DNA of 64,000 nt from IMGVR_UViG_3300017971_000001:1-64000, one strand, 5' to 3'; shown: positions 17,564 to 50,706, counted from the stretch's first letter. Notes: generated by a model not told the origin, from the sequence alone. Translations and numbers: made by a program.

Positions 17564-17969
17564 ATTCACGCTGATCGAGCTCATGGTCGTGATCGCGATC
17601 GTCGCCCTGCTGCTGGCGATCGCGGTGCCAGGCATGCTTCACTTCCGCCAGACAGCGAACGAGTCCGCGGCCATGGAGTACATGCGCCAGTGGCACCAGG
17701 CGCAAGAGCGCTACCGCATGAAGCACAGCGTCTACGCCACGAGCGACGAAGCTCTGATCAGCGAGGGTCTGATCAGCAAGAAGAGCGCGGCCGGCAACGG
17801 CTACACGTTCGCGATCGACAACGCGGACAACAAGTACGTCTGGTCGGGCCGGGCGACTCCGCAGGTAGAAGGTCAGCGGCACTTCTATATCGACATGACC
17901 GGAGTGGTCCGTCACTCGACCGGCAGCCCGGCGGACGCGAGCAGCCCGCCAGTCCAGAGCAACAACTAG
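17520..17969 (+). CDS. Type IV pilin-like protein
   Basis: AGGAG RBS 9 nt upstream; FTLIELMVVIAIVALLLAIAVP N-methylation helix with E5; residue -1 is Arg rather than Gly. Confidence 0.85.
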   Translation: MNSASLASRTWTSRRFTLIELMVVIAIVALLLAIAVPGMLHFRQTANESAAMEYMRQWHQAQERYRMKHSVYATSDEALISEGLISKKSAAGNGYTFAIDNADNKYVWSGRATPQVEGQRHFYIDMTGVVRHSTGSPADASSPPVQSNN

Positions 17970-18994
17970 TAGCGGTCCCAGCCCTCGAGGTATCCGCCGC
18001 GGGCCCCGTGCCTCCCAGGGTCATTGAGGGGCACAGGCAAGTCCTCGAGCTCCGCCCAGTAACCTTCTGCTTCGTAGAGCCAGGCCTGCGCCGCGTCCTG
18101 GCCAGCGAAGTCCGCTCGCCACTTGCTGGGGTAAGGTCCGTCCGGCGGCAGTTGGTGCATGTAGCCGGTGTTGTCGATCAGAATGTTCAGATACCAGCCG
18201 TTGAAGTGCGGCGAGCTTTGCCAGTAGACGATCGCCTCTTCTCCGTCGCCGAGCGCGTAGGCCTCGTCGAGGTCAATGCGATCAGGGATCGGCTCGTTGA
18301 TCGGCTTGCCGACTCGCTCGCAAACCCGCGAGCAGAATCCGCGCCATGCTGGCGAGTCATGTTCGGGATTCTCAGGAAGTTCGACGCCGCACGCATAGCA
18401 GACCGAGTCGTCGTAGGGCTGCTCTTGGTCCGAGGAAGGGTTGAGCTCGATCCGGCGCGTTGTGTCACCGAACAGCAGCCAGTCGGCCATGGTGCTGTTG
18501 ACTTCCTGCTCCATTCGTCTGGCTCTGCGCTTGCTTTCTTCCTCTCGTGCCTTCGGAGTTCTCGGCCGTTCTGAGGTCGAGTTCGCGGCGGCGTCGATTG
18601 CCGTTTCGACGATTTGGGCGAGAACGTAACGAGGATCGGGGCCCCATTCTTCCTGCATGACCAAATCAAGTCGACTGTGGGCCATGTTCCCATAGAACGC
18701 AGCTGAGAGCTCTGGCAGGTTCCGGCGAGCGTAATCGATCAGCAGGTCGGTGTATTGGATTGCGTAGTCCGGCGACCTAGAGATCTGCAGGAAGTCGTCC
18801 GCCCATTGCCGCTTCTCGGAGTACTTGGCTCCGTAGAACTTCCCTGCCGACTGTTCGAGGAACTCGGCCAGCGCCAGGTCGCGCCGGTCGAGCTCGCCGG
18901 TGCGGAGTCGCTCTCGGATCAAGCGCTCGCGTTCTTCGGGGTCGCCGCTGCGCCGGACCCGGCGACGAGAGGCGTCTGGGTTCCGACGAATCAT
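17966..18994 (-). CDS. Tag-family protein (RRNP variant) with CxxC...CxxxC
   Basis: MIRRNPDASRRRVRRSGDPEERERLIRERLRTGEL. Confidence 0.7.
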   Translation of the reverse strand: MIRRNPDASRRRVRRSGDPEERERLIRERLRTGELDRRDLALAEFLEQSAGKFYGAKYSEKRQWADDFLQISRSPDYAIQYTDLLIDYARRNLPELSAAFYGNMAHSRLDLVMQEEWGPDPRYVLAQIVETAIDAAANSTSERPRTPKAREEESKRRARRMEQEVNSTMADWLLFGDTTRRIELNPSSDQEQPYDDSVCYACGVELPENPEHDSPAWRGFCSRVCERVGKPINEPIPDRIDLDEAYALGDGEEAIVYWQSSPHFNGWYLNILIDNTGYMHQLPPDGPYPSKWRADFAGQDAAQAWLYEAEGYWAELEDLPVPLNDPGRHGARGGYLEGWDRY

Positions 18995-19506
18995 GAGATT
19001 AGCCCGTGCTCCTCAATGTCCACTGAGAGGCTGGAGAGCTCGTAGCTCCCGTTGAAGATTTCGATCGCGTCTTCGTAGCGTTCTTGTTCGATCGCGAGCT
19101 CCACCTGAAGGCGCTGAGGGTCGTCCTCAGGAATCAAGTTCTCGTCGAGCTCGTTGTCGATCCATTCGACCGCTTCCCGGAGCGCGGCCCAGCGGTTCGT
19201 GAAGACGCCATGAAGCGTGTGGTTGGCAACGGTCCCGTCTCCGTCGTCTTCAATGTGGAGCACGTAGACCACGGGGAATGTACCGGTCCCCACCTGGCGC
19301 GCGATATGCCTTAGGTCGTACCTGAAGAGTTCGTGCAGGAGGCGGTTGACGGTCCCGGGCTCAAGGGTTCCCTCGCTGGCCAGCACGAGCTCCGCTGCGT
19401 CTTCGTAGACGCCTCGCCGCGCGCGCTCCTGGTGCAGCGCTTCGCGCTCGTTCAGCCCGCCTTCGATCGCGGCTCGCTCGAGCTCTCGCAGTCGTTCGTC
19501 GCTCAT
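18991..19506 (-). CDS. SD-R-tag protein, acidic
   Basis: MSDERLRELERAAIEGG. Confidence 0.75.
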   Translation of the reverse strand: MSDERLRELERAAIEGGLNEREALHQERARRGVYEDAAELVLASEGTLEPGTVNRLLHELFRYDLRHIARQVGTGTFPVVYVLHIEDDGDGTVANHTLHGVFTNRWAALREAVEWIDNELDENLIPEDDPQRLQVELAIEQERYEDAIEIFNGSYELSSLSVDIEEHGLIS

Positions 19507-19509
19507 GAC

Positions 19510-19710
19510 TCAAGTCTCCCACGGATTCGGCCTGCGGTCCGGCTGGCGCCGCTGGCGGTCTTGATCCGCTCGGTCCCTTCGCTCGACGTAGCAATGACAG
19601 CACTCACCGAAGCGTCCGTTCTTGGTGACCTGATACCAGATCACATGACTTCCACGTCTTCCGCAGCCGTTCGCACAGATTGGAAAAAACGTATCGGCAG
19701 GAAGGGTCAC
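19510..19710 (-). CDS. Small Cys-rich protein
   Basis: CANGC and CCHC; coupled to the upstream gene. Confidence 0.55.
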   Translation of the reverse strand: MTLPADTFFPICANGCGRRGSHVIWYQVTKNGRFGECCHCYVERRDRADQDRQRRQPDRRPNPWET

Positions 19711-20600
19711 ACGGGCGGCACAATCCCGCCGGAGGCGAAGGGGGCGAGTTCGTTAAGCATGGCCCGGCGGACGCGGCGGCGAGCCTGGCGGATAACCTTG
19801 TCGCTTCGGTAGTAGCCCTTCGTTTCGGTGTACGAGCGCGCTTCGATCGCTTCGTTGATCACCATGAGCAACTTCGACTGCAGGTCGCTCCTGTCGTTCA
19901 GCGTCAGCGCCAATCGAATGAATACGGCCATACAAACGGGCACGAGCGGGCTCGTCTGCCCTGCGGGCAGCGCTATGCGGGTCCTCCACCAATCGCCGTC
20001 CCCCCAGGCTGGCACGAGGCCAAGCGAGGGCGCGAGGCTCGTCGCTTCACGCAGTAGGACTCGGACGTCCCGGCGGAGGTCTTCCCCGCCGCTGAAATTC
20101 CACATTGCCGTGCAGCGGGCGTGAACTGCTCCGCCGAATTCAGCCCAGCGCTCTTCCCCTTGAGTCATGTAGCGACTCAGAAGTCGGTCGGCGGCGTGGA
20201 CGATCCGACGCGGAAGTCCGAGCTCTTGCTCGGTGTCGATTCGAATGTAATCAACGCCCCAGATCTCGTCCTGCGACTCCCAGATCTCGAGCGTATCCCG
20301 CGCCGCTGCTTTCGCCATGCAGAACGCCAGCGGACCGCAGAAGCCAAAGGCTCCCTTGGTGACCGTAAGACGCGTAGCCCACTTGAGGCCTTCTTGCTTC
20401 AGGATCGAGCGGGCCGCAGGGTCCTCGAGGTGGCCGAGTAGCTTGATCACTTGCCACGCCATGCCCAGGTCGCCGCGCTTCCCTTCAACACGTCCGAGTT
20501 CCCCGCGACGCAGCGCTTCCAGCATGAGCGCCTCTCGGATCGCCGGGTCGCGCCCTTCTTCGTATTCGCGCTGTAGCTCTCTGATCTGTTCGTCGCGCAC
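19707..20600 (-). CDS. SD-R-tag protein
   Basis: MRDEQIRELQREYEEGRDPAIREALMLEALRRGEL. Confidence 0.7.
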   Translation of the reverse strand: MRDEQIRELQREYEEGRDPAIREALMLEALRRGELGRVEGKRGDLGMAWQVIKLLGHLEDPAARSILKQEGLKWATRLTVTKGAFGFCGPLAFCMAKAAARDTLEIWESQDEIWGVDYIRIDTEQELGLPRRIVHAADRLLSRYMTQGEERWAEFGGAVHARCTAMWNFSGGEDLRRDVRVLLREATSLAPSLGLVPAWGDGDWWRTRIALPAGQTSPLVPVCMAVFIRLALTLNDRSDLQSKLLMVINEAIEARSYTETKGYYRSDKVIRQARRRVRRAMLNELAPFASGGIVPPV

Positions 20601-20602
20601 GG

Positions 20603-21301
20603 CTAACCTCTGCTCCGCCAGGTTAGATAGTGAATGGGGTCCTCCTCGAATCCAGAGCTCAAGAGTCCTGCGAAGTCGCCGGCGCTTTCCGCAAGTTCCT
20701 GCACGGTTTTCACGTGCTGCTCCGCTGCCTCCCTTTGCGCGGATACGAACGCGTCCGCCACGATCTCGAAGGTGTCTTCGTCACGCTCTCCGTCTTCGCC
20801 GATTGCCCAGATCGCGGTCTCCATTCGCTCGAAGCTGTAAGGGGGTCGATAGACGCTTCCGTGAAGGGCTTTGACCGCAATGGTGTTGACGACCCACGAT
20901 TCAGCGTCGTGGAAGTTGACCGTTGTCCGGACAGCCGGAAAGGTCATGAAGCCCTCCTCCATGAGGGCGTATTGCACGCTGAACATGAGCACGATCAAGT
21001 CGACGTTCAGCGGGTCCAGCCTTAGTGCCTGCCGCATGGTTCGGTGGGCCTGAACGAACAGGCGATCGGCTTGATCTCTATCTCCACCCCATTCCAGGTT
21101 CCGCGGCCCGCTGCCGCTACCCCATTCCAGATTCCGCTCAATCGAGCGCGCGAGCTCGAGTTCAAGCCATGAGAGCCTGCCGAGCTCCTCTGCTGTTGCG
21201 TCCTGGGTCCGATCGCGCCGGTCACGCAGATAGGCCAACTCGGCGTCCGGGTCACCTGCTTGCGCGGCTCGGTGAAGCTCTCGTTGCCGACGATCGCTCA
21301 T
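20603..21301 (-). CDS. SD-R-tag protein
   Basis: ATGA-coupled start; MSDRRQRELHRAAQAGDPDA. Confidence 0.75.
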   Translation of the reverse strand: MSDRRQRELHRAAQAGDPDAELAYLRDRRDRTQDATAEELGRLSWLELELARSIERNLEWGSGSGPRNLEWGGDRDQADRLFVQAHRTMRQALRLDPLNVDLIVLMFSVQYALMEEGFMTFPAVRTTVNFHDAESWVVNTIAVKALHGSVYRPPYSFERMETAIWAIGEDGERDEDTFEIVADAFVSAQREAAEQHVKTVQELAESAGDFAGLLSSGFEEDPIHYLTWRSRG

Positions 21302-22080
21302 GCCAACTCCAGCAGCCAGGGAATGAGGGTCTGGCGCATGGGCCGAAGAGTGAGTTCGAGCGAGTCCTCCTCGCTGTAACCGCCCTCCATGTTGTATGAC
21401 TCGTAGGTGTTCACCAGGAATCGATTGAACCCGTCGAAGCGCACGTCGCGGCCTCGTGAAACCTCGTAGGTGTCCCGAGCGCACGCGATCAGCCAGATCA
21501 ACGGACGCTGGATCGCAAAGAAGCTCTCGGCGTAGTCGACCCGCCGAGCTTCGGCTGAAGGGTCGTGAATGACCATGTCGCCAATGTCCTGGCCGAGGAG
21601 TCGAACGCGATCGCGGTGATACCTCTGTTCGATCGCGGTGACCTCCCATGGGCTTGAGACAGGCTGACCCGGACGTGCTGCACGCCGCGCCGCCACGACG
21701 ACGCTATCTGGAACGTCGTCGCCGAATCTGAGCCACGGCTCTTTAGCCTCAGCGACCGGAGCCCAAAAGTAGTCGACCAGGGCGGCGCAGGAGTTTGCGC
21801 ACGCCTCCAGCATGCGCTTCATGAACTGAACGTCGCTGGTCCCCAGGCCCTGCATTTCGAAGTAGAGGGCGGCAGTGATCCCCGAGAGCATGTCTCTTGG
21901 CTCGAGGTTCGGCAGGCCGCGAATCTCGACGAGGGCTGGTTCGAGCAGATTCCAGAGCACGGCGATCCGGGTGTTGGAGTAGATCCCCTGCCGCAGCGCT
22001 TCGGCCATGTAGGCGCGCTGGACGTCCGGGTCGCCCTCCAGATACAGGCGGCCGAGCTCTCGGAGTCTGCGGTCGCTCAC
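21298..22080 (-). CDS. SD-R-tag protein
   Basis: GTGA-coupled start; MSDRRLRELGRLYLEGDPDV. Confidence 0.75.
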   Translation of the reverse strand: MSDRRLRELGRLYLEGDPDVQRAYMAEALRQGIYSNTRIAVLWNLLEPALVEIRGLPNLEPRDMLSGITAALYFEMQGLGTSDVQFMKRMLEACANSCAALVDYFWAPVAEAKEPWLRFGDDVPDSVVVAARRAARPGQPVSSPWEVTAIEQRYHRDRVRLLGQDIGDMVIHDPSAEARRVDYAESFFAIQRPLIWLIACARDTYEVSRGRDVRFDGFNRFLVNTYESYNMEGGYSEEDSLELTLRPMRQTLIPWLLELA

Positions 22081-23243
22081 TGTCTGGGCCCCCTCTCGCG
22101 AAGATTGAACGGATCCTCGCTCTTGTGGCGGGCGACCCAGTAACGACCCGCGGACCATTTGAGCGCCTTGTGCCACGGGTCGTTCATGTAGTCGGCGTGA
22201 CCGTCAGCGTCCTTGCGGTCGAAGTCGACGAGGTTTTGAGCCAGGTCCATGACCCGCAAGACCTCTCCGTCCTCTCCAGCGCGCGTCCAGTAGTTCACGA
22301 GCTCGTAGTAGGCCTCAATGTCCCCCTCGGCCGCAGCGCGCTCGAGCTCCAGGGCGCGCTCGTCGCTTGGGTTCAGCCTGGGGTTGATTCCCAGGTCAAA
22401 CTTGAAGTCCGACGCTCGATCCAGAAGCTTTCGCGGGTCTTCTTCTGAAGCGAGCATGTTAGCCTTGCTCGCTGCGTTGGGAGAGACGTCTACAGCAATG
22501 GGTTGGAGCATGGCCGCGGCGACGCTGATCAGTTCGTTGGCCTGCTTCAGGTTGTTTGCGCGGGCTGCACTCAGAGCAGTGTCGAGTACGGCCAGGGGTT
22601 TCTTGCTGATCCGAGGGGGCGGAGCCCATGGGGGGTCGCCGGGCCCGGGTGGAGGGGCCTCGGGAGGCTCGACCTCGAACTCTTGCCGCTCCCAGCGCGC
22701 AAGTATGCCATTGGACCAGTCAAGTAGCCTGACGGCGTTGAGTAGCCGTGAAGACGCCTCTTCGTAGTCTCCGCGAAGAATGGCGCCTCGGGCCCAGACC
22801 ATGTCAATAAGCGCGTCTTCGATCGCGTCTCGCGGCCAGCCGGCGTAGTCGTCAAGATCTGACAGCGGATTCCCTTTCCATTTCGGATCGTCGTGCCAGG
22901 GGCCGTAATGCCCTGACTGCATTGCCTTGCGCCGCGCCTCGCGTTCGGTGTATTCGACGGCGTTGCTGACCTGGCCCATGCGGCGGTAGAGCTCTGCCGG
23001 CATGCGAATGTCTCGACCGACGGCCCGATCGACCGCGAAGCGGACGGGATACTGCCTGCCGCCAGGTCCGGGCACGAACATGTCGAATTCGATCCAGGCG
23101 TGCGCGTAAGGGATTCCTTCGATCTCTCCTTGCCCGATCACGGTTCCGTGAACGAGTCGGGCTGTGTCGTTGCCGGCGAACTCGCCCATAGGGAAGGCGA
23201 TCTCGTTCAGCGAGACCTCGAAGCAGTCGCCGAGGTCGCTCAT
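22077..23243 (-). CDS. Modular protein: Cys-His-Asp (papain/transglutaminase-like) domain, NP, helical domain, NP, SD-R tag
   Basis: GDCFE...LVHG...HAWIE...AVD...GHYGPW; WKGNP; LNPSDERALELERAAAEGD. Confidence 0.7.
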   Translation of the reverse strand: MSDLGDCFEVSLNEIAFPMGEFAGNDTARLVHGTVIGQGEIEGIPYAHAWIEFDMFVPGPGGRQYPVRFAVDRAVGRDIRMPAELYRRMGQVSNAVEYTEREARRKAMQSGHYGPWHDDPKWKGNPLSDLDDYAGWPRDAIEDALIDMVWARGAILRGDYEEASSRLLNAVRLLDWSNGILARWERQEFEVEPPEAPPPGPGDPPWAPPPRISKKPLAVLDTALSAARANNLKQANELISVAAAMLQPIAVDVSPNAASKANMLASEEDPRKLLDRASDFKFDLGINPRLNPSDERALELERAAAEGDIEAYYELVNYWTRAGEDGEVLRVMDLAQNLVDFDRKDADGHADYMNDPWHKALKWSAGRYWVARHKSEDPFNLRERGPRQ

Positions 23244-23725
23244 GGGAATCGCTCTCGTCCAAAGCCGCCCAGGTCGCGCCGGACCTGGTCGGGAAGCACT
23301 TCGCCCACGCTGCCGCGGAGCGTTCGCTGCAAGCCCTCTGCGTCTTCGTAGAGCACCATGGCAGTCGTCGGGGTCTCGTTGTGGTCCATGCCTGAGTCCC
23401 AGAACCGGAACAGCGCGTATTGCAGGACCGGCGCCCCGGCGGCGCGCGAGAACATAGCGAGCTCGCTGTGCGGGACGACTCCGTATTCTCCCAGCGAGGA
23501 CAGGTGGATCCGAATGAAGTCTCCGGATCCCGCGGAAGCCGAGATCAGCTGAACGTCTCGCTCCAGGCGGTTCAGCGGCCGCGGCGGGAGGAGTCCGCGG
23601 ACGCGCGCGATCTCGAGTTCTCGTTCGGCCTCAGCGTCTCCCGAAGCCGCGGCGCGCTGAAGGCGCTGCAGGCGCTCGTCAGCGTTTCTTCGAACGCTTC
23701 TTCGTTGCCTTCTTCTTGGTCGCAC
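23240..23725 (-). CDS. Tag-family protein; start uncertain and overlapping the upstream gene tail
   Basis: GTG-RPRRRQRRSVRRNADERLQRLQRAAASGDAEA. Confidence 0.55.
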   Translation of the reverse strand: MRPRRRQRRSVRRNADERLQRLQRAAASGDAEAERELEIARVRGLLPPRPLNRLERDVQLISASAGSGDFIRIHLSSLGEYGVVPHSELAMFSRAAGAPVLQYALFRFWDSGMDHNETPTTAMVLYEDAEGLQRTLRGSVGEVLPDQVRRDLGGFGRERFP

Positions 23726-25685
23726 GCTTCTTCTTCGCCTTCTTCTTGACGGCCTTCTTCTTGGCGGGGCGCTTCTTCTTTGGAGGGCCGGTTTTCTTCT
23801 TCGGGCGCTTCGAATACTCTTCCTTCCATTCTCGCACTTCGTCGGCGTCGAACAGAAGAATCTCGCGCTCGCTTCCAGCGTGCTCGGGGACGCGATCGTG
23901 AGGAGCGCCCTTGCGAACCCAGGCATAGACCGTGACCGGAGAGACCCCCAGGGCTTCGGCGACCTCCTGTCGCGTCATGCGTCGGTGCCCACGCTGGGGC
24001 TCGATCTGGATCTTGTTCGAGCGAATGTATTCGCTGATCCACTTGGCCGAGGGGCCGAACCTCTCGGACGCCTCGTTGTAGGAGTGCCCAGCGCGGAGGT
24101 AGTCCACGATCTGCTCGTAGAGCTCAGGCCCGTAGCGAATATTCCCCTCCGAGCGCGCCTTGCGGCTCCGCTCCTTGTAGTCCTCGTACCACTCTCGAAC
24201 TTCGTCAGCGTTGAACAGTCGGATCACTCGGCCTGCGCTGTCCTCGCCAACAAGATCATGAGGGACGTCCGTTTTGCGGAGCCAGTGGTCAACCGTGCTG
24301 AGTCCGACGCCGAGCGCTTCGGCGAGCTCGCGCCGGATTAGGCCTCGGTGACCCTTCTGCCGAGCTCGGACCTTTTCCTCCCAGATTTCCTTGCGCCGCT
24401 GACTGGACTTCTCTCGCTGCCGCTGCAGGTATCCCTCGTGCCAGGTCAGGAACTCGTCCTTGTTCCAGACGAGGTCGTTCTTCCAGCGACCGTGGGGTGC
24501 TCCCTCCTCTCGCGCCAGGCCGCGCAGGTGAGACGGGCTCATGCCAAGCTCGTCAGAGAGATCTTCGGTGCTGTAGAGGCCGCGCTCTTCGAGATACCTT
24601 CGCCGGCGCTCGAATTCGCGCTCTGCCGTCGAGCGAGCCTGCTTGGCCTGATCGGCGCGGACGCGTTCGAGGTATTCGTCGTGCCAGGCAATGAGCTCGT
24701 CGGGATTCCAAAGGATCGCGTGCTTGAGTTTCTTGTGGGGAGCGCCGTGTTCTTTGGCGAGGATTCTCAGGTGTTCTTCGCTGATCCCTGCCAGGTCGGC
24801 CATTTCCCTGGTCCCGACGTAGCGCAGCGCGTAGTCAATCGTGACCTTTTTCAGGTTCTTTCGCCCCTGGAAAGTCCAGAACGCCTGTCCGTCAGCAATC
24901 GCTCGCTTGACGTATTCTTCGATCACCTTCTCCCCGAGCGCAGGGAAGTCTACGGCCAGCTGATTGATCGTGGCCGTCCCGTTGCGCGCCTCCAGCGCGT
25001 CAAGGATCTCCGCCATGACGTCGCTGTCCTCGGCAATGGCAGACTTTCCCTTCCGGCGAACCTCGGTCACCTCGCGCTCCTGGGCCTCCATTCGCTCCAT
25101 GAGGCCCGCGGCGTAAGAACTCTGTTCGAGGTGCTCCGTGCAGTACTTCTTGCCGTGACGGGTCGGCTCGCCGCAAATCGCACAGGGCGTAGGCTTCTTT
25201 CGCCCCGGCCCTCGATCGGCTCCGTAGCTCCGATCGACCGTGCGAGGGTTGACTCCAATCGGCGGCCCGCCAGCGTCCATGTCCGGTCCTTCGTAGGGTC
25301 GGCGCGCGTGCGGCAGCGAGAAGTAGAGGCGCTTGAGGAAGGGGCGCTTCTTGAGTCGGGCGCTGATCGCCTGCGCGGTTACGTCGTATCGGCGCGCAGC
25401 CTCGCTGATCGTCAGGCCGTTGTCAATGAGGTCTCGGAAGATCTGATCCCAGACGTGATCCGGCTGCGGCGGGTTGTCTTGCGGCAGGATCCGTACGACG
25501 TCGGGCGGAACAGAGAGCATGAGACTCCGGCCGTTGTCCCAGTCCACGTCGACCTGAGCGAAACCGCCGCGCCGCACGTCACCGACGATCCGCACGCCAC
25601 GAACGACGCCCCTTGTCCCAGGACGGATCGGGCAGGGATCGTCCATGAACACGAGCTCGATCCGGTCTCCAGCTTCAGGGGTCAT
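23679..25685 (-). CDS. DUF4314-like domain plus multiple winged-HTH repeats and a Lys-rich tail
   Basis: GDRIELVFMDDP...VDWDNGRSLML; CxxC..CxxH; four MerR/Nu1-like repeats (..LA..LG.S......W...G.PH.....F.....W); KKK tail. Confidence 0.75.
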   Translation of the reverse strand: MTPEAGDRIELVFMDDPCPIRPGTRGVVRGVRIVGDVRRGGFAQVDVDWDNGRSLMLSVPPDVVRILPQDNPPQPDHVWDQIFRDLIDNGLTISEAARRYDVTAQAISARLKKRPFLKRLYFSLPHARRPYEGPDMDAGGPPIGVNPRTVDRSYGADRGPGRKKPTPCAICGEPTRHGKKYCTEHLEQSSYAAGLMERMEAQEREVTEVRRKGKSAIAEDSDVMAEILDALEARNGTATINQLAVDFPALGEKVIEEYVKRAIADGQAFWTFQGRKNLKKVTIDYALRYVGTREMADLAGISEEHLRILAKEHGAPHKKLKHAILWNPDELIAWHDEYLERVRADQAKQARSTAEREFERRRRYLEERGLYSTEDLSDELGMSPSHLRGLAREEGAPHGRWKNDLVWNKDEFLTWHEGYLQRQREKSSQRRKEIWEEKVRARQKGHRGLIRRELAEALGVGLSTVDHWLRKTDVPHDLVGEDSAGRVIRLFNADEVREWYEDYKERSRKARSEGNIRYGPELYEQIVDYLRAGHSYNEASERFGPSAKWISEYIRSNKIQIEPQRGHRRMTRQEVAEALGVSPVTVYAWVRKGAPHDRVPEHAGSEREILLFDADEVREWKEEYSKRPKKKTGPPKKKRPAKKKAVKKKAKKKRATKKKATKKRSKKR

Positions 25686-26386
25686 TGCCAGAACTCCTCG
25701 GTCCTTGCGCGCCAACGTCGTGAGGATTCGACCAGGAGGCCGTGCGCGTTCTGTTCCCAGTCGCCCTCGAGGTCCTGCGAGTAGTAAGGCGCGTCCACGA
25801 AGGCGCTGATCTTTTGCAGGCCGATCGCGAAGAGGCCCTTGTATTCCGAAGCGAAGACTTGGACCCCGATTGGGACTGGCGAGCGCGCTTCGCCCACGTA
25901 GCGGTGCAGGTTTTGATCGATTCCGCGCCAGGGTTTATAGAGCGCATAGACGCTCCAGATCGGAATGAAGTCCTCTTCGTTGGCTCCGGTGTGCATGCGC
26001 CGATCGATCAGGCTGGAATCAAGGGCGATCCTCAGCACATAAGGCCCGTCACTGAAGGTCAGGAATTCCTCGCTGTCGATCAGGACTTGTTCGGCAGCGA
26101 TCTTGCGCTCGGGTCCGTCTGCCATGAACCCTTCCGGGTCGACGTATTGACCGCTCGCTCTTTCGTAGTCTGCGGACACGGCGTCCTCAGCGCCTTCCTC
26201 GGTCCACACGTTTCGCCGCGGCCACTCGCTGAACTCTCCGCTTGCCAGCATGTCGCTGCGAACGAAATCGCGGGCCTGGTCCGGGTCGTATCGCTTGTAG
26301 GCGGAATAGAGCGCCCGGAAGATCTCGTCGTTGGACGGGTCTTCCGCGTAGGCGCGCTCGAGTTCTCGGGTTCTCCGGTCGCTCAT
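25682..26386 (-). CDS. SD-R-tag protein
   Basis: MSDRRTRELERAYAEDP. Confidence 0.75.
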   Translation of the reverse strand: MSDRRTRELERAYAEDPSNDEIFRALYSAYKRYDPDQARDFVRSDMLASGEFSEWPRRNVWTEEGAEDAVSADYERASGQYVDPEGFMADGPERKIAAEQVLIDSEEFLTFSDGPYVLRIALDSSLIDRRMHTGANEEDFIPIWSVYALYKPWRGIDQNLHRYVGEARSPVPIGVQVFASEYKGLFAIGLQKISAFVDAPYYSQDLEGDWEQNAHGLLVESSRRWRARTEEFWQ

Positions 26387-27407: not shown

Positions 27408-27409
27408 AG

Positions 27410-27849: not shown

Positions 27850-28371
27850 TCACCCTCCGTAGACCCAGTCCGGCACCGCGATCTCGTAGAACTCGCACGC
27901 CGACTCGGTCTGGGCGACGTAGGCCTCGCGGCTCGGGCAGAGCACGATATGGAGGTCGCCCTCGGTTACGCCCACTTCGGCCAGCAGAAGGGGCGAGCTT
28001 AGGACTTCCTGGAATGGGGTGACGTAGAGCACGCGCCAGGGGAAATCCACGAATCCGGCCCGGGTGGTTGCGGCGATTTCGTCGAGGTCGTTGGGATCAT
28101 GGCCGCCGCCGTAGTTTGCCGCGATCAGGCAGCCGTGTTCGTTCGTGCGCTGCTCCATGTTCCTGGCGAGGCCTTCCAGGGCCCGGCGCCCGTAGTGGAA
28201 CTGCCTCTGCACGAGCTCGGTCGGGCTGAGGATCTCGTTCGGAAGTCGCAGAAGCACCTCGACCGCACGCTCGTCCTCCCCGAGTCGCTCGAGTTCGTGA
28301 AAGAGGGCGTATCCGGCGGACTCGTCTCCGTCGGCGAAGGCGCGCTCAAGTTGGCGGAGCCTGCGATCCAT
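27850..28371 (-). CDS. SD-R-tag protein
   Basis: MDRRLRQLERAFADGDESA. Confidence 0.75.
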   Translation of the reverse strand: MDRRLRQLERAFADGDESAGYALFHELERLGEDERAVEVLLRLPNEILSPTELVQRQFHYGRRALEGLARNMEQRTNEHGCLIAANYGGGHDPNDLDEIAATTRAGFVDFPWRVLYVTPFQEVLSSPLLLAEVGVTEGDLHIVLCPSREAYVAQTESACEFYEIAVPDWVYGG

Positions 28372-34184: not shown

Positions 34185-34186
34185 AG

Positions 34187-34273
34187 CGCGGGGTCAACTA
34201 GTCAGGTCCATGTTCTCGGGCTCATAACCCGAGGGGGCGAAAGCCCCACGCAGGTTCGAATCCTGCCCCGCTA
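34187..34273 (+). tRNA. Initiator-type tRNA-Met(CAT) with an atypical long variable arm
   Basis: CGCGGGG/CCCCGCT+A acceptor with C1:U72 mismatch; anticodon arm TCGGG-CTCATAA-CCCGA; GGTTCGAATCC T-arm; extra GGGGC-GAAA-GCCCC arm; no encoded CCA. Confidence 0.8.
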
Positions 34274-35140: not shown

Positions 35141-35142
35141 GG

Positions 35143-43291: not shown

Positions 43292-43292
43292 T

Positions 43293-44645: not shown

Positions 44646-44670
44646 GCCGTATGCTAGAGGAGGCAGATCC

Positions 44671-46056: not shown

Positions 46057-46297
46057 GCGATCAGCGAGAGGAGCTCATGGGCGACGTCAAGGATTCTTGA
46101 CCTGCACCCTGCGCACAGAGGCTTCACTTCACGTGGGTTGATCGCTGGCAGTAGCGCGTCAATCTTGGCGAGCGCGGCGTCGATATCGTTCATACAACCT
46201 CTCCCGCCTCCAGTCTTCAGCGTAAAGTCCCTGCTGAGGCCCGCCATGTCTCATTTGTGGAACAAGCGGGCGCCGCTGAAGAACTTAGACTGGAGCT

Positions 46298-47179
46298 ATG
46301 AGCCGCGATCGCCGAATCCAGCAGCTGATCAGCCGGGCCTCTGAGGGCGATTACGACGCCGCAGAGTCTTTGATCTTCGAGGCGCTCAGGTCCGGGCGCC
46401 CTTACTGGGATCCGGACCACAGGATCGTCAACGAATACAGGGCTTCCCTCGCTCGCTTCCTGGGCTACCTGCGCTGGCCGCGTTGGGAGGAATTCCTTCA
46501 GGTGATCGCCCCGATCCCCTGTTCGCTGCCGCGCTTTTCCAAGATTGGCCCAGAGACCGTCAAGAGGATCCCGCCCGACGTGCTCTCGGCGGCCGTCGGA
46601 GGCGCCGCCGAGTTCGTCGCCCCTCTGATCGGAATCGAGCGGGACGTGATCCTTGAGGCGGCGTCGCTGGGCGGACAGCACCGTCTCCTTGTGGGCAAGC
46701 TGCGCTCAGCGGACGAGCCGATCACCAGTAACCCCGAGGTGCGGGCGATCCGAGGGAGGCTCCACGACCTGCGTCACTTCGTGCGCGACGAGGCGCTCGG
46801 CGCTGACTTCAGAAACGACGAATACATTTCGTCGATCGGGGAGGCATTAACGAAGGCGGGCGCCAAGGGGATTCGTGAGTGGATCTCTTCTCAGGACATG
46901 AGCCGCTACAACCGTCTAGGCTATCTCTACGAGGCGACCTTCTACCTCGAGCTCGCGCTGGCGATTCAATGCGAGGCGGACGAGTTCGGCAATGACTTCC
47001 CAATCGTGCGTCAGGACGGCACGCCTTACGGCCCTTACCTCCCTTACCCCGGCCGGCCTGACCGCGGCTGGCGCCCGAGTCGCTCCTGCTCGACCAAGGG
47101 CAAGCGCGCGGCCCGCAAGGCCATGCTCGGCCCGGCGATCTTCGCGACTTCTTCCTACCTGCTGGAGCGCTTGCTGTGA
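46298..47179 (+). CDS. SD-R-tag protein
   Basis: TAGACT-ggagct-ATG; MSRDRRIQQLISRASEGDYDA. Confidence 0.75.
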   Translation: MSRDRRIQQLISRASEGDYDAAESLIFEALRSGRPYWDPDHRIVNEYRASLARFLGYLRWPRWEEFLQVIAPIPCSLPRFSKIGPETVKRIPPDVLSAAVGGAAEFVAPLIGIERDVILEAASLGGQHRLLVGKLRSADEPITSNPEVRAIRGRLHDLRHFVRDEALGADFRNDEYISSIGEALTKAGAKGIREWISSQDMSRYNRLGYLYEATFYLELALAIQCEADEFGNDFPIVRQDGTPYGPYLPYPGRPDRGWRPSRSCSTKGKRAARKAMLGPAIFATSSYLLERLL

Positions 47180-47664
47180 GCGACGCACGAATCCGCGCCG
47201 CCTTGCGCGACCTCTCGAGCACTGAGGAGGTCCAGGAGTTCGTGTTGCGACACATGATTCGGACGGGGGACTGGGTTCCTGCCCCTGAGAACAGGGGGGT
47301 CGACGACCCCGAGATTCCGCCAGAGGAGCTCTGGAGATCGGACCTCGAAAAGTACACGGGGTCGATCATTCTCACGAACGACTTCAGAGTCTTGGGTGAG
47401 GGTCCTGCGGATATCTTTTACTACGAAGGGCCCCGAGGCACACCCCCGTTGCCCTTCTTGCTCGAAGGGGGCAGCGAAGAGGTGGAGCAGTTCGACGGCT
47501 GGGCCGACGGTTGGTGGGATCTGAGTCCAGTCGTTCCGCTTTACTTCCCAGGCGTCGAAGGACCTTATTCCTTCGACGCCTACGGACCCTCCTACAGTGT
47601 CGACGGAAAGAGTCAGGGCCTGGGCTCTATCTGGGTCGAGCGGGAACTGGCGGATTTATTATGA
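47176..47664 (+). CDS. SD-R-tag protein (divergent)
   Basis: MSDARIRAAL...MIRTGD. Confidence 0.7.
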   Translation: MSDARIRAALRDLSSTEEVQEFVLRHMIRTGDWVPAPENRGVDDPEIPPEELWRSDLEKYTGSIILTNDFRVLGEGPADIFYYEGPRGTPPLPFLLEGGSEEVEQFDGWADGWWDLSPVVPLYFPGVEGPYSFDAYGPSYSVDGKSQGLGSIWVERELADLL

Positions 47665-49367
47665 GCGACGCACGTCAACGGCGACTCGAGCGCGCGGCCG
47701 CGGCTGGTGACCGGGAGGCGGTCAACGCTCTGGTCGTACAGGAATACCTCGAGAATGGTCGCTACGACTTCCTGGTCAATGACCGAGGGACCGAGTGGCA
47801 GGTCAGCGTGATCGCGCCGGAACCGGGCGACTGGGCGGACGACCCCCTCGTTCACTTTGCTCGCATTCCTAAGAACAGGCCTGACCTTGGGTTCGTTGTT
47901 GGGCTAAGGCGCTATTACGCCAGCACGATCCTAAAGACAGCGGAAAAGGGCGACGGGATCGGATTTGGTAGAGACTGGGGCTCCATTTCTGGAAAGGCGG
48001 TCAAAGAGGCCGCCCGCACGATCCGCTTGCTGGTCGAGGAGTCTGGGCGGCGCTTGGATCACCGGTACGTCAGTTTCGGCGAGGGCTTCAGGATCGACGC
48101 GCCGGGCTTCGAGTTCGGCAAGGATCGCGTCTGGGACCTCTGCCTTCACCGAGATTTTCCCAAGTGGGAGCGCTGGTATCCGTCCGGGTCATGCCCCGAA
48201 GGGAGGAGCTTGGGTGACCTGGTTTTTCGAAGGATCTCAAAGCGCCGGTCTCGCTTCGGAGGATTCCCGGGGCTCAAGGGCCTCCGGAACCTGCGTGGCC
48301 TCTCGCGCAGGCGCTTCGACGAGCTCGCCCGCGAGCAGAAGATCCACCCGCTCCCCCGCGGTTGGTGGGAGAGAAAAAAGAACCCGATCAGCACGGTCCG
48401 AAAGGGGCGTCGACTGTTCCGCAGTGTCTCGCCCTTTGAAATGAACGCGATCCTGACGACGGGCCGGGTTCTCGGTCGTCGGGCGTCGTTCTCGGAGGAC
48501 GTGACCCAGCACAAGACCAAGCGCTCGGACTGCGTGACCTTCTGGGGCACCAAGCTCAAGGACGTCCTCCACCACGGCGAGGACTACCTGCGCTACTTCC
48601 AGTCCCTGCCGATCGTGCGCGACGCCTTCGCTGCGCTGTGGCCGGTCTCGAGCCTGGCGGACAACCTCTACATGAAGACCAGGGATCAGCCGCACCGCTT
48701 CCGCTACACGAAGCTCGCCGTGCGACTCGCGCTCGACCTGACCCGCGAGCTCCAGGAGGGCCTCCGGCGGGCCCTGTTCGTCGCTGCGCAGGAGTCCGAG
48801 TCCCAGAAGCCAGAGCTCGAATCGACCAGCTACGTGATCGAGACGAAGCCGTTGAGCGGCGGGACGCTGTTCACCGGCAAAGACTCGCTCTCCGGGGGGC
48901 GGCGAGGACAGAGGCACAGCCCGCCCGAAGTCTGCACGAAGGACGCTGTCGGCATTGAGGACGTGCGGGTGTTCTACCTGGTCAAGGACGGAGAGGTCTG
49001 GGCAGAGATCTTTGACGAGTTCGACCTCCCCTTCGTGCCCGTGCCGACCTTCGACGACCTCGCGATCGAGCGCGCCGTCGCCGCGGTCTACGAGGCTGGC
49101 CCTCGCCTGGCCGAGCTCGAGCTCGCGCTGAAGGAGGCGGCGGAGAAGTTGAAACGCGGCGAGGACCTCCGCAAACCTCGCCCCTTGGAACGCTTGCTGT
49201 CTCACGCCTCCCTCGGGATCGACCGTCGCGAGCTCGGTGAATACGACAGCCAGCTGACCAGCAAGGCCAAGCGCCAGGGCTGGATCGAATTCGACCGCGC
49301 CGAGCGCCTCTGGGTTTTGACGGAGGCCGGTGAGGAGCGCGAGGAAGCGCTGAGGAACGAGTTATGA
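47661..49367 (+). CDS. SD-R-tag, NP-linked two-module protein
   Basis: MSDARQRRLERAAAAGDREA; KKNP linker; second module begins RLFRSVS (weakly ART-like). Confidence 0.72.
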   Translation: MSDARQRRLERAAAAGDREAVNALVVQEYLENGRYDFLVNDRGTEWQVSVIAPEPGDWADDPLVHFARIPKNRPDLGFVVGLRRYYASTILKTAEKGDGIGFGRDWGSISGKAVKEAARTIRLLVEESGRRLDHRYVSFGEGFRIDAPGFEFGKDRVWDLCLHRDFPKWERWYPSGSCPEGRSLGDLVFRRISKRRSRFGGFPGLKGLRNLRGLSRRRFDELAREQKIHPLPRGWWERKKNPISTVRKGRRLFRSVSPFEMNAILTTGRVLGRRASFSEDVTQHKTKRSDCVTFWGTKLKDVLHHGEDYLRYFQSLPIVRDAFAALWPVSSLADNLYMKTRDQPHRFRYTKLAVRLALDLTRELQEGLRRALFVAAQESESQKPELESTSYVIETKPLSGGTLFTGKDSLSGGRRGQRHSPPEVCTKDAVGIEDVRVFYLVKDGEVWAEIFDEFDLPFVPVPTFDDLAIERAVAAVYEAGPRLAELELALKEAAEKLKRGEDLRKPRPLERLLSHASLGIDRRELGEYDSQLTSKAKRQGWIEFDRAERLWVLTEAGEEREEALRNEL

Positions 49368-49810
49368 GCGACGTGCGCCTGAGGAAGCTCGAGGCAGAGG
49401 CCCGGCAGGGCGGGCAGCCCGAAGTCTGGGCTTACCTTTCCCTGAAGGTCCGGGTTGCGCCGGACGCTCTCACCCTAGCCGACCTCAACATGGCCCAGGA
49501 CTTCGGCTTCGTGTTGCCGCCCGAGATTATCCAGCCGCTCGCGACCTTCGTGGGCCGGCAGTGCTCGGCGGCCGACGTCGTCATGCACACGGAGTATCGC
49601 GGGGCCGATATTTCGATCTTCGAGTCCGAGGGTTACGGACTTGAGGGCATGGGCCCTTACCTGGTCGTCTCGGTCGAGACGGCCGAGATCGAGCCGATCT
49701 TCCGCTTCGACGAGGAAATTGCGGCTCAGTGGGAGATCCCTCGCCTGCGCTTTTACGCCAACGAGAGCATGATCGAGACGGGTGCTGACGGCGGCTGGGT
49801 GAGCGAATGA
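49364..49810 (+). CDS. SD-R-tag protein
   Basis: MSDVRLRKLEAEARQGG. Confidence 0.72.
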   Translation: MSDVRLRKLEAEARQGGQPEVWAYLSLKVRVAPDALTLADLNMAQDFGFVLPPEIIQPLATFVGRQCSAADVVMHTEYRGADISIFESEGYGLEGMGPYLVVSVETAEIEPIFRFDEEIAAQWEIPRLRFYANESMIETGADGGWVSE

Positions 49811-50706
49811 GCGACGAGCGAATCCAGCGCCTCGAGCGCGAGCTCACGATCGACTCTAGCAACGTCGACCTTCAGCACGCCCTGGTCCGCGAGCGGGTTC
49901 GGGTCGGTGACTACCTCCCGATCGCGCTCGAGTATCTGCTCGAGGGCAAGCCGGTGCTGCCCTGGCAGTTCAACGCGATCAGCTACGTGTTTCTGGAGGC
50001 CGAGCGCCTCGGTCGGGAAACGGGCTATCAGGAGGGGCGTGTCGAGGCGATCTACCGGCCGGGCGTGGTCAACGCGAACGGCATGGTCCCTATGTGGGGA
50101 CTGGATCAGGCTCCCGACTTCGACGGCTGGGGGAACCCGACTTTCGCGCCCGCCTTGCGGCGCTTCTACGTCAAGACGGCAAGCCTCTGGCTGCAAGGAA
50201 TGGGAGCCCTGGGCGGATTCAGCGAAGAGGAACTCCATGAACTCCCAAGTCGTTTGCGTTATTTGCCCGGCGACCGCCCTGCCTATTCGCTTGAGGTCAC
50301 CCGGCGCTTCGTTCCCCCGCGTCACGTTCCGGCGCTGCACCTGATCGAGGGCTGTCGATACGAATACATGCACAAGGGCAAGCTGAGTCCGGAAGACTCG
50401 GCTTCGATCCCTCGCTTTTTCCTCGAAGAGTTCGAGGGACGCACGTATTACGCAGGCAGGGATCGCTACGACTGCCGGCACGCACGCATGCCCTACAACC
50501 CTCTTCTGCGTCGTGAGTTCGCAGGCAGGTTCCCCGAGCTCCACATGCCTCAGAGGGTCCTGGCGGCCGTCAGGCGCCCCGGCGGATACGTCGACAACTC
50601 CTCGATCTTCCTCGACGTTCGTATGTTCGAGGCGGCGCGGATCATGAAGCGCGTGGGCAAAGGCCGGCGCTGGAAGAACAACCCGTGGCGTCGCTCTCAC
50701 CGCTGA
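49807..50706 (+). CDS. SD-R-tag protein ending in KNNPWRRSHR
   Basis: MSDERIQRLERELTID. Confidence 0.72.
   Translation: MSDERIQRLERELTIDSSNVDLQHALVRERVRVGDYLPIALEYLLEGKPVLPWQFNAISYVFLEAERLGRETGYQEGRVEAIYRPGVVNANGMVPMWGLDQAPDFDGWGNPTFAPALRRFYVKTASLWLQGMGALGGFSEEELHELPSRLRYLPGDRPAYSLEVTRRFVPPRHVPALHLIEGCRYEYMHKGKLSPEDSASIPRFFLEEFEGRTYYAGRDRYDCRHARMPYNPLLRREFAGRFPELHMPQRVLAAVRRPGGYVDNSSIFLDVRMFEAARIMKRVGKGRRWKNNPWRRSHR

What the first reader, a model, noticed from the sequence alone, without database searches (positions are those of the whole stretch)
17966..50706. Asn-Pro (often RRNP/KNP) marks domain junctions: polyprotein-like architecture
Seen: NP lies at apparent module boundaries in many large ORFs. 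Examples: 22077-23243 (WKGNP, RLNP|SDER), 23679-25685 (QDNP, GVNP), 29067-30236 (KSNP before DUF6884), 31039-32862 (RRNP|SDRD, LRNP|PYYH before the ART-like domain, RRNP|SPED), 39595-40989 (AANP|DER, VANP|DGR), 47661-49367 (KKNP|IST); also near termini (19510 RRPNPWET, 49807 KNNPWRRSHR). The same tag occurs both after an initiator Met and after NP. Established: Met aminopeptidase removes Met before Ser, so MSD.. proteins would begin SD... Inference: cleavage after NP would give the same N-terminus as de novo initiation, so NP may be a protease site that releases individually tagged modules. It could alternatively be a recombination joint.
Basis: partly seen in the sequence, partly recalled or inferred. 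Interest (0 to 1): 0.72.

Follow-up and report, generated by a model that had tools for sequence, protein, structure and literature searches.

The report
Asn-Pro boundary motif of phage cassettes
In this uncultured marine jumbo phage and its metagenomic relatives, a large undescribed family of modular proteins is built from swappable cassettes that each begin with Arg-Arg-Asn-Pro plus a 33-residue helical tag, so Asn-Pro does mark module junctions, but whether it is cut there is untested.

Summary
The window is the first 64 kb of a complete 245-kb phage genome from marine sediment and seawater metagenomes. About 40 of its proteins carry a 33-residue helix-turn-helix tag (S-D-E-R-L-R-x-L-E-R-x-A-x-x-G-D...).

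- **Tag position.** At a gene start the tag follows Met directly. Anywhere else it is preceded by [RK][RK]-N-P.
- **Independent check.** A profile of the window's tags found 527 unnamed metagenomic proteins with up to six tags each. In the 137 best non-own hits, 105 of 123 internal tags have NP within 8 residues upstream, against 3.4% of background windows. Most of the rest have N-S or N-A.
- **Enrichment.** [KR][KR]NP is about 14-fold enriched in tagged proteins and not enriched in the phage's other 318 proteins.
- **Homologues.** They gain, lose or swap whole modules exactly at NP, including NP sites with no tag (before the ART-like domain, after "KGNP").
- **Level of constraint.** Codons at the motif vary, so the constraint acts on the protein, not the DNA.
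- **Cleavage.** It is neither shown nor excluded, and no protease was found.

My best reading is a structural boundary signal (turn or helix N-cap) for freely shuffled cassettes. The main rival is a true RRN|P processing site. The family matches no Pfam, NCBIfam or PHROG model.

The parts
18875..18994 (-). N-terminus of gene 17966-18994: M-I-RRNP leader followed by a tag variant
   Evidence: The ATGA overlap with the upstream gene fixes the start codon.
19408..19506 (-). Tag at Met1 (MSDERLRELER...) of gene 18991-19506
19510..19710 (-). Small uncalled Zn-ribbon ORF ending ...RRPNPWET*. It lies in frame with the next tag gene, separated by one TGA. NP is at 19522-19527.
20499..20600 (-). Tag at the start of gene 19707-20600
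21203..21301 (-). Tag at the start of gene 20603-21301. The true start is the internal ATG of the longer ORF 20603-21649.
21982..22080 (-). Tag at the GTG start of gene 21298-22080, with a GTGA overlap on the stop of 22077-23243
22272..22373 (-). Internal junction RLNP plus tag (aa 291-324) of gene 22077-23243
22866..22871 (-). KGNP junction without a tag (aa 125-126 of 22077-23243). The about 155 aa between this NP and the NP at aa 291 are absent from homologue P0037.
23597..23692 (-). RRNA plus tag near the N-terminus of gene 23240-23725 (Ala in place of Pro)
25470..25475 (-). QDNP, 4 aa after the DUF4314 domain of the multi-HTH protein 23679-25685
26285..26386 (-). Tag at Met1 of gene 25682-26386
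28276..28371 (-). Tag at Met1 of gene 27850-28371
29514..29519 (-). KSNP, 5 aa before the DUF6884 domain of gene 29067-30230
30947..31042 (-). Tag at the GTG start of gene 30227-31042
32731..32835 (-). RRNP plus tag 1 (aa 10-44) of gene 31039-32862, after a 9-aa basic leader
32320..32325 (-). LRNP(P) junction before the ART-like domain (aa 180-181). Homologue P0154 carries an extra module of about 140 aa inserted exactly here, flanked by NPP on both sides.
31672..31776 (-). RRNP plus tag 2 (aa 363-397) of gene 31039-32862. Modelled as coil followed by a helix-turn-helix.
39853..39858 (+). RVAANP|DER before a weak tag variant in gene 39595-40989. A second RVVANP|D at 40552-40557 is unverified as a junction.
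46298..46399 (+). Tag at the start of gene 46298-47179
47176..47274 (+). Tag at the GTG start of gene 47176-47664
47661..47762 (+). Tag at Met1 of gene 47661-49367
48381..48386 (+). KKNP, 8 aa before a domain that lies at the N-terminus of P0064
49364..49456 (+). Tag at Met1 of gene 49364-49810
49807..49911 (+). Tag at Met1 of gene 49807-50706, whose C-terminus is ...KNNPWRRSHR
15669..15767 (+).

Best explanation
The range 17.9-50.7 kb holds two arrays of genes from a phage-restricted cassette family that matches no model in Pfam, NCBIfam or PHROGs.

**What a cassette is.** It has three parts: a boundary motif [RK][RK]-N-[P>S,A], a tag of about 33 residues, and a variable body with a median of about 160 aa. 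The tag is a helix-turn-helix hairpin with the pattern D-E-x-L-R-x-L-E-R-x-A-x-x-G-D-P-x-A...R-x-G. The bodies include ART-like and other unknown folds.

**How cassettes are arranged.** They are encoded either singly or concatenated into proteins carrying 2-6 tags. In single genes the start codon sits where the Asn would be, giving M-S-D-E. Evolution inserts, deletes and swaps cassettes exactly at the NP.

**What NP most likely does.** I think it is structural punctuation, not a cut site.
- N-P-D-E uses residues that established helix-capping statistics favour at the helix N-cap, N1, N2 and N3 positions.
- N-P-G, N-P-S and N-P-P are classic turn or linker starts.
- The motif would therefore end whatever lies upstream and nucleate the first helix of the tag, letting each cassette fold on its own in any context.
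- On this reading the multi-cassette proteins work as uncleaved beads on a string, like the polyvalent proteins of phages.

**Shown:** the motif, its association with tags and module junctions, its protein-level conservation, and the hairpin fold.

**Inferred:** the capping or insulating role, and the absence of cleavage.
For: - **Motif-tag association.** 105 of 123 internal tags in 137 independent metagenomic proteins have NP within 8 aa upstream, against 3.4% of background windows. Spacing is 0 aa in 68 of 124 cases.
- **Conservation.** Asn is invariant in the 93-sequence junction alignment. Upstream, only positions -2 and -1 (R or K) are conserved.
- **Fold.** AlphaFold2 on the 93-sequence junction alignment gives pLDDT 84 overall and 95-97 in the hairpin. 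The model shows coil through RRNPS, then helix 18-30, a turn, and helix 34-64.
- **Helix starts elsewhere.** In the low-confidence full-length model, other NPs also sit at helix starts (N149-P150) or just after helix ends (N180).
- **Cassette mobility.** The same body follows an N-terminal tag in one protein and an internal tag in another.
- **Breakpoints.** 27% of internal BLAST HSP ends lie within 3 aa of NP, against 3% for random positions. For left ends (module starts) the figure is 44%.
- **Homologues.** P0154 and P0037 differ from the window proteins by whole modules bounded by NP.
- **No DNA-level motif.** Codons at RRNP vary.
- **No protease.** No recognisable protease family was found in the genome.
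Against: - Capping does not explain the conserved Arg-Arg at -2 and -1.
- Capping does not explain the near invariance of Asn (about 91% of internal tags, my tally from the listing), when Ser, Thr and Asp cap helices equally well.
- The spacing between NP and the helix varies from 0 to 6 aa, which is unexpected for a fixed structural cap.
- RRNP is kept after leaders of only 2-10 aa (MIRRNP, MSYRHNP) yet is dispensable in M-S-D forms.
- RRNP repeats occur in Pro/Gly-rich or very basic, non-helical contexts at 222-228 kb.
- All five points fit a recognised linear motif, whether a cleavage or a docking site, better than a passive cap.
Confidence: 0.45

Rival explanations
1. True polyprotein processing. 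[RK][RK]-N|P (or NP|) is a cleavage site, used either by an unidentified phage or host protease or by Asn-cyclisation self-cleavage. Cleavage would release each cassette with a small N-terminal residue ahead of D-E-R-L-R. That is the same end that Met aminopeptidase produces from M-S-D-E genes.
For: - Asn aligns with the initiator Met, and the +1 residue is always small (P, S, A, T, G), as after Met removal.
- A conserved element of 4-5 residues (R-R-N-P-D) sits at every junction whatever the flanking modules are, as in viral polyprotein sites.
- RRNP is retained after very short leaders but is absent from M-S-D forms.
- Fused and split versions of the same junction both exist. Gene 22077 ends ...RGPRQ* and is followed by a new gene, while P0037 reads on through YNPPAGDRRIREL. 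The small-ORF junction RRPNPWET*VMSDERL is a second case.
- N|P bonds are known self-cleavage sites, for example the NPTH motif of FlhB/YscU (PMC3430611) and, from my own knowledge, reovirus mu1.
Against: - There is no proteomic evidence.
- No protease family was detected in the genome.
- NP here lies in a linker next to a helix, not in a strained loop of a folded autoproteolytic domain.
- Cleavage at the tandem RRNP repeats of the proteins at 222-228 kb would chop them into peptides of 10-17 aa.
- Spacing to the tag varies, so the resulting N-termini would differ from one cassette to the next.
Confidence: 0.3
2. RRNP is a short linear docking motif. A common partner would read it on exposed linkers, for example a packaging or assembly factor, a chaperone or a nucleic acid. 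Tags and RRNP together would recruit many different cargo modules to one place, such as the capsid interior or an early-infection complex.
For: - The motif occurs independently of tags and in tandem copies in four very basic proteins: RR-NP-RVYGDYGPPALPP repeats, RK-NP-ARKKK and KK-NP-MGA.
- One of these four shares its C-terminal region with multi-tag proteins from other phages. I noted this by eye for gene 224768-226051; the BLAST matches among P0013, P0028, P0065 and P0143 are.
- Enrichment is confined to these protein sets.
Against: - No partner has been identified.
- A tag homodimer prediction gave no answer.
- M-S-D forms lack the motif, so it cannot be essential for tag function.
Confidence: 0.12
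3. DNA-level recombination joint. The sequence encoding NP or the tag would be a homology patch that drives cassette exchange, in the way the VENN-coding region does in cdiA loci.
For: - Cassettes are clearly exchanged at this position.
- A GC-rich run of 17-20 nt (CTCGAGCGCGCGGCCGCG, encoding L-E-R-A-A-A) is shared by a few tags.
Against: - RRNP uses many different codons.
- Mean tag nucleotide identity is 49% over the first 42 nt, and the 95th percentile of exact runs is 12 nt. Codon identity at identical residues is 0.50, which I judged to be near expectation from codon usage without a formal test.
- The conservation is therefore of the peptide, not of the DNA.
Confidence: 0.05
4. Chance, or the generic preference of NP for turns. 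On this reading nothing is specific to these proteins.
For: NP is mildly over-represented (1.41-fold) even in the 318 unrelated proteins of the phage. About 18 of the 30 NPs in the range are not at demonstrable junctions.
Against: - [KR][KR]NP is enriched about 14-fold, and only in tagged proteins.
- 85% of internal tags have an upstream NP, against a 3.4% background, in independent metagenomic proteins.
- Homology breakpoints are about 9-fold enriched within 3 aa of NP.
Confidence: 0.03

Closest known systems
Polyvalent proteins of phages and conjugative elements (Iyer et al. 2017, PMC5512222)
   Same: Both are strings of unrelated modules in one phage polypeptide. Both show fluid domain architectures. 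Processing into separate modules has been proposed for both but is mostly unproven.
   Different: None of the signature domains is present; MPTase was tested and absent. The cassettes here are punctuated by a repeated tag and an RRNP motif that I did not find in a term search of that paper. Virion packaging is unknown.
Junction motifs of polymorphic toxins (VENN in CdiA, PxxxxDPxGL in Rhs). This comparison rests on my own knowledge.
   Same: A short conserved peptide marks the point where variable cassettes are exchanged.
   Different: Those motifs occur once, ahead of a C-terminal toxin, and exchange uses DNA homology. Here the motif repeats before every module, the codons vary, and the proteins are phage-encoded with no secretion domains.
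Asparagine peptide lyases and N|P self-cleavage: the NPTH motif of FlhB/YscU (PMC3430611, PMC3708937); reovirus mu1 N42|P43 (from my own knowledge)
   Same: Both have an Asn-Pro dipeptide with a near-invariant Asn at a position where two polypeptide parts could separate.
   Different: In those proteins NP lies in a strained loop inside a folded domain. Here it lies in a linker 0-6 aa before a helix. TH does not follow it, and there is no FlhB-like fold.
Helix N-capping and repeat-start motifs: the Asn N-cap / Pro N1 / Asp-Glu N2-N3 preferences and the ankyrin TPLH motif (established structural knowledge)
   Same: N-P-D-E at the start of helix 1 of a helical hairpin. The AlphaFold2 model starts the helix 1-2 residues after NP.
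   Different: The conserved Arg-Arg, the variable spacing, and NP sites unconnected to helices are not explained by capping.
Viral polyprotein sites and T4-type capsid-targeting sequences removed by a prohead protease
   Same: A short motif is shared by many otherwise unrelated proteins of one virus, and a common N-terminal tag is carried by many cargo proteins.
   Different: No S77, S78 or ClpP-type protease was detected. The motif is not L/I-x-E or S/A/G-x-E. Nothing shows that these proteins are in the virion.
2A 'StopGo' peptides (D-x-E-x-N-P-G|P)
   Same: Both contain N-P, often followed by G, at a junction between protein modules.
   Different: No upstream consensus exists beyond R-R. 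NPGP itself is rare. From my own knowledge, 2A is not known to work on bacterial ribosomes.

Membership tests
Polyvalent proteins (Iyer et al. 2017) | Two or more unrelated effector-type domains in one polypeptide of a phage or plasmid | tested here: met
   Gene 31039-32862 reads tag-body, then an ART-like domain, then tag-body. Database relatives carry up to 6 cassettes.
Polyvalent proteins (Iyer et al. 2017) | Presence of the recurrent signature domains, for example the MPTase zincin | tested here: not met
   PF18818 gave no match in the genome. Pfam found only DUF5591 in 8 large relatives.
Polyvalent proteins (Iyer et al. 2017) | Delivered with the DNA or packaged in the virion | not testable with these tools
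   No proteomic data exist and the host is uncultured.
Asparagine peptide lyase, YscU/FlhB type | An NPTH motif within the FlhB C-terminal fold | tested here: not met
   NP is followed by D/G/S/P, not by TH. The context is coil followed by a helical hairpin.
Asparagine peptide lyase (any type) | Demonstrated cleavage C-terminal to Asn | not testable with these tools
   This needs protein chemistry.
2A-like ribosome-skipping peptide | A D(V/I)ExNPGP consensus with a conserved upstream stretch | tested here: not met
   Information content upstream of position -2 is below 0.5 bit. The residue at +2 is D in 53 of 110 cases and G in 23 of 110.
TIGR02996 repeat-companion domain (Gemmata/myxobacteria) | A match to the NCBIfam model | tested here: not met
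   No candidate was found in the genome, and hmmscan of 10 tagged proteins gave none.
TPR / Sel1-like repeats | A Pfam match above the gathering threshold, with tandem repeats | tested here: not met
   Only a sub-threshold TPR_7 hit, and it lies elsewhere in the protein. PDB profile hits to designed TPRs have E-values of 0.8-10. Foldseek found nothing at E<=0.001. The tag is a single hairpin.
Prohead-protease-processed head proteins (T4 capsid-targeting or phiKZ type) | A prohead protease gene in the genome | tested here: not met
   PF03420, PF04586 and PF00574 gave no match. This is a weak negative, because the ten large proteins tested at 208-242 kb, a region I guessed to be structural, also match no PHROG.

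The most novel reading that the evidence does not exclude
These dsDNA jumbo phages use a true polyprotein strategy. RRN|P would be a dedicated processing site, cut either by a novel protease or by Asn-lyase chemistry assisted by the adjacent hairpin. Concatenated cassettes would be cut into individually tagged proteins, equivalent to those made from the stand-alone M-S-D-E genes. The tag's exposed N-terminus would then serve as a common address for about 40 different cargo or effector modules.
Probability: 0.27. Interest if true: 0.85.

Novelty: new variant of a known kind. Interest (0 to 1): 0.62.

Why it matters
- **A usable rule.** [RK][RK]-N-P plus the tag profile delimits modules in hundreds of otherwise unannotatable proteins of uncultured large phages. 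It also gives clean construct boundaries for expression and structure work.
- **If the junctions are cleaved.** This would be, to my knowledge, the first systematic polyprotein strategy in a tailed dsDNA phage, with a new protease specificity or a new Asn-lyase context.
- **If they are not cleaved.** It is a clear natural example of an insulator motif that lets cassettes be shuffled freely, which is relevant to how phage accessory and counter-defence repertoires diversify.
- **Either way.** About 40 proteins, more than 10% of the genes of a 245-kb phage, share one N-terminal address. That points to a single unknown hub that they all engage.

Tried and rejected
- **Close relatives in phage collections.** Megablast of 12 kb against the phage collection found nothing. 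An IMG/VR scan with protein 31039-32862 also found nothing.
- **Known families for the tag.** TIGR02996 was a lead from memory; the genome has no match. NCBIfam, Pfam and PHROG scans of tagged proteins gave no family covering the tag.
- **Structural relatives of the tag.** A PDB sequence profile search gave only weak hits to designed helical repeats. Foldseek of the hairpin model found nothing significant.
- **Full-length structure.** AlphaFold2 of 31039-32862 with a 2-sequence alignment gave pLDDT 44, too poor for a fold search.
- **Tag self-association.** The homodimer prediction returned "no answer", which is not evidence either way.
- **Proteases.** Searches for S78, ClpP, S77, C13 and MPTase families found none.
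- **Bacterial genomes.** A scan of GTDB representative genomes with a canonical tag found no relative.
- **RBS-origin idea.** I considered that RR might be an in-frame AGGAGG from a ribosome-binding site. It is rejected because the codons are mostly CGN or AAG.
- **2A-like skipping.** Rejected.
- **More homologues.** A homologue search for 39595-40989 returned only the protein itself.
- **The basic RRNP-rich proteins.** PHROG and Pfam scans of the proteins at 222-228 kb and of the shared C-terminal module found nothing.
- **Literature.** Searches found no description of the motif.


Full report
**Context.** The window is the first 64 kb of a 245,276-bp virus record with direct terminal repeats and 63% G+C. 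It is found in marine sediment and seawater metagenomes. It encodes collagen-like tail fibres, one tRNA-Met and mostly ORFans. I made my own gene calls with a codon-usage model, giving 366 genes. Several ORFs that appear long are really two tightly coupled genes with ATGA or GTGA overlaps.

**The tag.** Many genes in 17.9-32.9 kb (minus strand) and 46.3-50.7 kb (plus strand) begin M-S-D-E-R-L-R-x-L-E-R-x-A-x-x-G-D-x-x-A...R-x-G. An HMM built from these starts finds 19 copies in the window (plus one at 57381) and 38 copies in 34 proteins genome-wide at E<0.01. Further degenerate variants are visible by eye. No Pfam, NCBIfam or PHROG model covers the tag. TIGR02996, which I recalled as similar, does not match. 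AlphaFold2 on a 93-sequence alignment of junction segments gives a confident helix-turn-helix hairpin, with pLDDT 95-97 in the core. The RRNPS stretch is coil immediately before helix 1. Foldseek and PDB sequence searches find no specific relative.

**NP and the tag in this phage.** Wherever the tag is not at Met1, it is preceded within 0-4 residues by [RK][RK]-N-[P/A].
- Internal cases: RLNP|SDER (22077-23243, aa 291) and RRNP|SPEDRE (31039-32862, aa 365). Outside the window: QMNP|DD, RRNPERG|D and ENPNKG|D.
- Cases after short leaders: MIRRNP|D (17966-18994), MASRRARRPRRNP|SD (31039-32862) and RRNA|DER (23240-23725). Outside the window: MSYRHNP|SD.

**Statistics within the phage.** NP is the 4th most over-represented dipeptide (observed/expected 1.78). 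[KR][KR]NP occurs 25 times, against 1.8 in residue shuffles. The excess is confined to particular proteins.

| Protein set | NP obs/exp | [KR][KR]NP observed vs expected |
|---|---|---|
| 44 tagged proteins | 2.32 | 11 vs 0.8 |
| 4 very basic proteins at 222-228 kb | 6.99 | 11 vs 1.6 |
| 318 other proteins | 1.41 | 3 vs 2.2 |

The generic turn preference of NP therefore does not explain the signal.

**Independent replication.** A profile of 18 window tags (alignment A1) was searched against 1.84 billion representative proteins. It gave 527 hits at E<=1e-3. The best are proteins of 400-1,500 aa with up to six tags. All are unnamed metagenomic proteins. One lies on an 85-kb phage-like contig with 69% G+C, next to other tagged genes. 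In the 137 best hits that are not this phage's own proteins there are 234 tags:
- 76 tags start at Met1.
- 105 of 123 internal tags have NP within 8 residues upstream, against 3.4% of background windows.
- Most of the remainder have N-S, N-A, N-T or N-G at the same place, so by my tally Asn is present in about 91%.
- The spacing from NP to the D-E anchor is 0 aa in 68 cases, 1-2 aa in 39, and 3-6 aa in 17.
- Thirty-five tags follow short leaders of the MxxRRN[P/S/A] type.

Aligned on NP, only position -2 (R in 51%) and position -1 (R or K in 42%) are conserved upstream. Positions -15 to -3 carry under 0.5 bit each. The consensus is [RK][RK]-N-[P>S,A]-D-E-x-L-R-x-L-E-R, and the Asn occupies the position of the initiator Met in M-S-D-E genes.

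**NP as a module junction.** I split all tagged proteins at their tags and compared the bodies. The same body follows an N-terminal tag in one protein and an internal tag in another, in 21 of 87 significant pairs. The alignments often start at residue 1 of both bodies. Full-length comparisons place homology breakpoints exactly at NP:
- P0012 reads ...GQ|RPNPDEDL where P0123 reads M|RRNPDEDL.
- P0012 reads ...VVKNP|tag where P0046 reads ...VVRNP|non-tag sequence.
- P0034 continues ...PWLL|EGKRKKKNPGD where P0008 ends.

Of 121 internal HSP ends, 27% lie within 3 aa of an NP, against 3% for random positions. For left ends (module starts) the figure is 44%.

**Window-specific cases.**
- The only homologue of 31039-32862 is P0154, 64-75% identical.
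- The domain after that site resembles stand-alone proteins of about 158 aa with a DUF2441/Arr-type fold. These are ADP-ribosyltransferase-like leads only.
- P0037 is a homologue of 22077-23243. It lacks the about 155 aa between KGNP (aa 125) and NPSDER (aa 291). It also reads on through ...KQYNPPAGDRRIREL where the window gene stops and a new GTG-SDRRL gene begins.
- KSNP lies 5 aa before DUF6884, and QDNP 4 aa after DUF4314.
- KKNP lies 8 aa before a domain that is N-terminal in P0064.
- GVNP, VANP|DGR and the C-terminal KNNPW could not be verified as junctions.
- RRPNPWET is the end of a small uncalled Zn-ribbon ORF. It lies in frame with the following tag gene across one TGA codon, and its last codons carry that gene's ribosome-binding site.

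**Level of constraint.** The RRNP codons are diverse: CGN, AGG or AAG for the basic residues, AAC or AAT for Asn, and all four Pro codons. Tag DNA among paralogues averages 49% identity over the first 42 nt. The longest exact run is 20 nt and the 95th percentile is 12 nt. I saw no clear excess of identical codons at identical residues. The conservation is therefore of the peptide, and a DNA recombination signal is unlikely.

**Mechanism.** Two readings survive.

(a) *Structural punctuation.* N-P-D-E matches the preferred residues at helix N-cap, N1, N2 and N3. N-P-G, N-P-S and N-P-P are classic turn or linker starts. This rests on established structural statistics. The models place NP 1-2 residues before helix 1, and at other helix starts or ends. 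A strong terminate-and-restart signal would let cassettes fold in any context, which would explain why selection keeps it at every junction of a freely shuffled family.

(b) *Processing site.* Five observations are better explained by a recognised linear motif than by a passive cap:
- the conserved Arg-Arg;
- the near-invariant Asn with a small residue at +1;
- the variable spacing to the helix;
- retention of RRNP after leaders of only 2-10 aa, while M-S-D forms do without it;
- the exact Asn-to-Met correspondence.

Cleavage after Asn would give the same kind of N-terminus as Met removal. Against reading (b): no protease was detected, there is no folded autoproteolytic context, and tandem RRNP repeats in the basic proteins at 222-228 kb would be cut into tiny peptides. 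Those repeats suggest a third possibility, a docking motif. A tag homodimer prediction was uninformative.

I put reading (a) at about 0.45, reading (b) at about 0.30, docking at about 0.12, a DNA joint at about 0.05 and chance at about 0.03.

**Comparison with known systems.** In architecture these proteins resemble the polyvalent proteins of phages (PMC5512222). In having a junction motif they resemble the VENN-type boundaries of polymorphic toxins. They lack the defining domains of both. The NP dipeptide recalls Asn-lyase self-cleavage sites such as FlhB/YscU NPTH (PMC3430611), but the context differs. 2A-like skipping is excluded by the absence of an upstream consensus. Literature searches found no description of the tag or motif.

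**Verdict.** It defines an undescribed cassette family of uncultured large phages. The protease interpretation is plausible but unproven, and the recombination-joint alternative is disfavoured.

Noticed in passing
G000 222324-227917 (loci L002, L003, L006): Four adjacent, very basic proteins are extremely NP-rich (observed/expected about 7). They carry tandem RRNP-type repeats such as RR-NP-RVYGDYGPPALPP (x3), RR-NP-MLA(V/I)VG-NP and RK-NP-ARKKK. By eye, the C-terminal region of 224768-226051 (...KAYKRFHKANP...) resembles the C-terminal module shared by the multi-tag proteins P0013, P0028, P0065 and P0143. No Pfam or PHROG match was found.
   Followed up: partly
G000 143401-146778 (minus strand): A 1,125-aa helicase-like protein appears to carry an intein. 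It shows LAGLIDADG-like blocks (GWLIGDG, YMDAEGS) and ends ...VAEGILCHN|T. Judged by eye only.
   Followed up: no
window 17520-17969 (+): A 149-aa protein has a prepilin-type N-terminal motif (RRFTLIELMVVIAIVAL). This hints at a host whose genomes are rich in such pseudopilins, for example Planctomycetota or Verrucomicrobiota. The host was not determined.
   Followed up: no
window 32865-34082 (-): This protein has five tandem repeats of about 42 aa (...ASPDYAQGTYLSPRQVP...MS...FGMGALPK...). It lies directly upstream of tRNA-Met (34186-34275) and of two Gly/Thr-rich proteins that look like fibres (34274-36783). None of the three has any PHROG match.
   Followed up: no
window 23679-25685 (-): A 668-aa protein has DUF4314 at its N-terminus, about five HTH_17-type repeats each followed by a W-x-E-x-Y helix, and a Lys-rich tail of about 45 aa. 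The tail overlaps the start of the next tag gene (23240-23725).
   Followed up: partly
window 19510-19710 (-): A 66-aa Zn-ribbon ORF (CxxxC...CCHC) fills the apparent 200-nt gap between genes 19707-20600 and 18991-19506. It has a GTGA overlap with the gene upstream. My gene caller missed it.
   Followed up: partly
window 37746-39026 and 39035-39595 (+): Two neighbouring genes without tags both have NPP at residues 11-13, after 10-aa leaders (MSLRKLRYEP|NPP and MSMLTLEGLG|NPP).
   Followed up: no
G000 133058-140637 (locus L005): Large proteins contain internally duplicated cassettes, each starting NP-PRGD(E/Q)RIRELER or NP-DERMRRL(G/E)R. This shows recent tandem cassette duplication within single genes.
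   Followed up: partly
window ~50.7-55 kb: The cumulative GC skew peaks near 50 kb and gene orientation switches there. The next 4-5 kb contain only short, weakly scoring ORFs.
   Followed up: no
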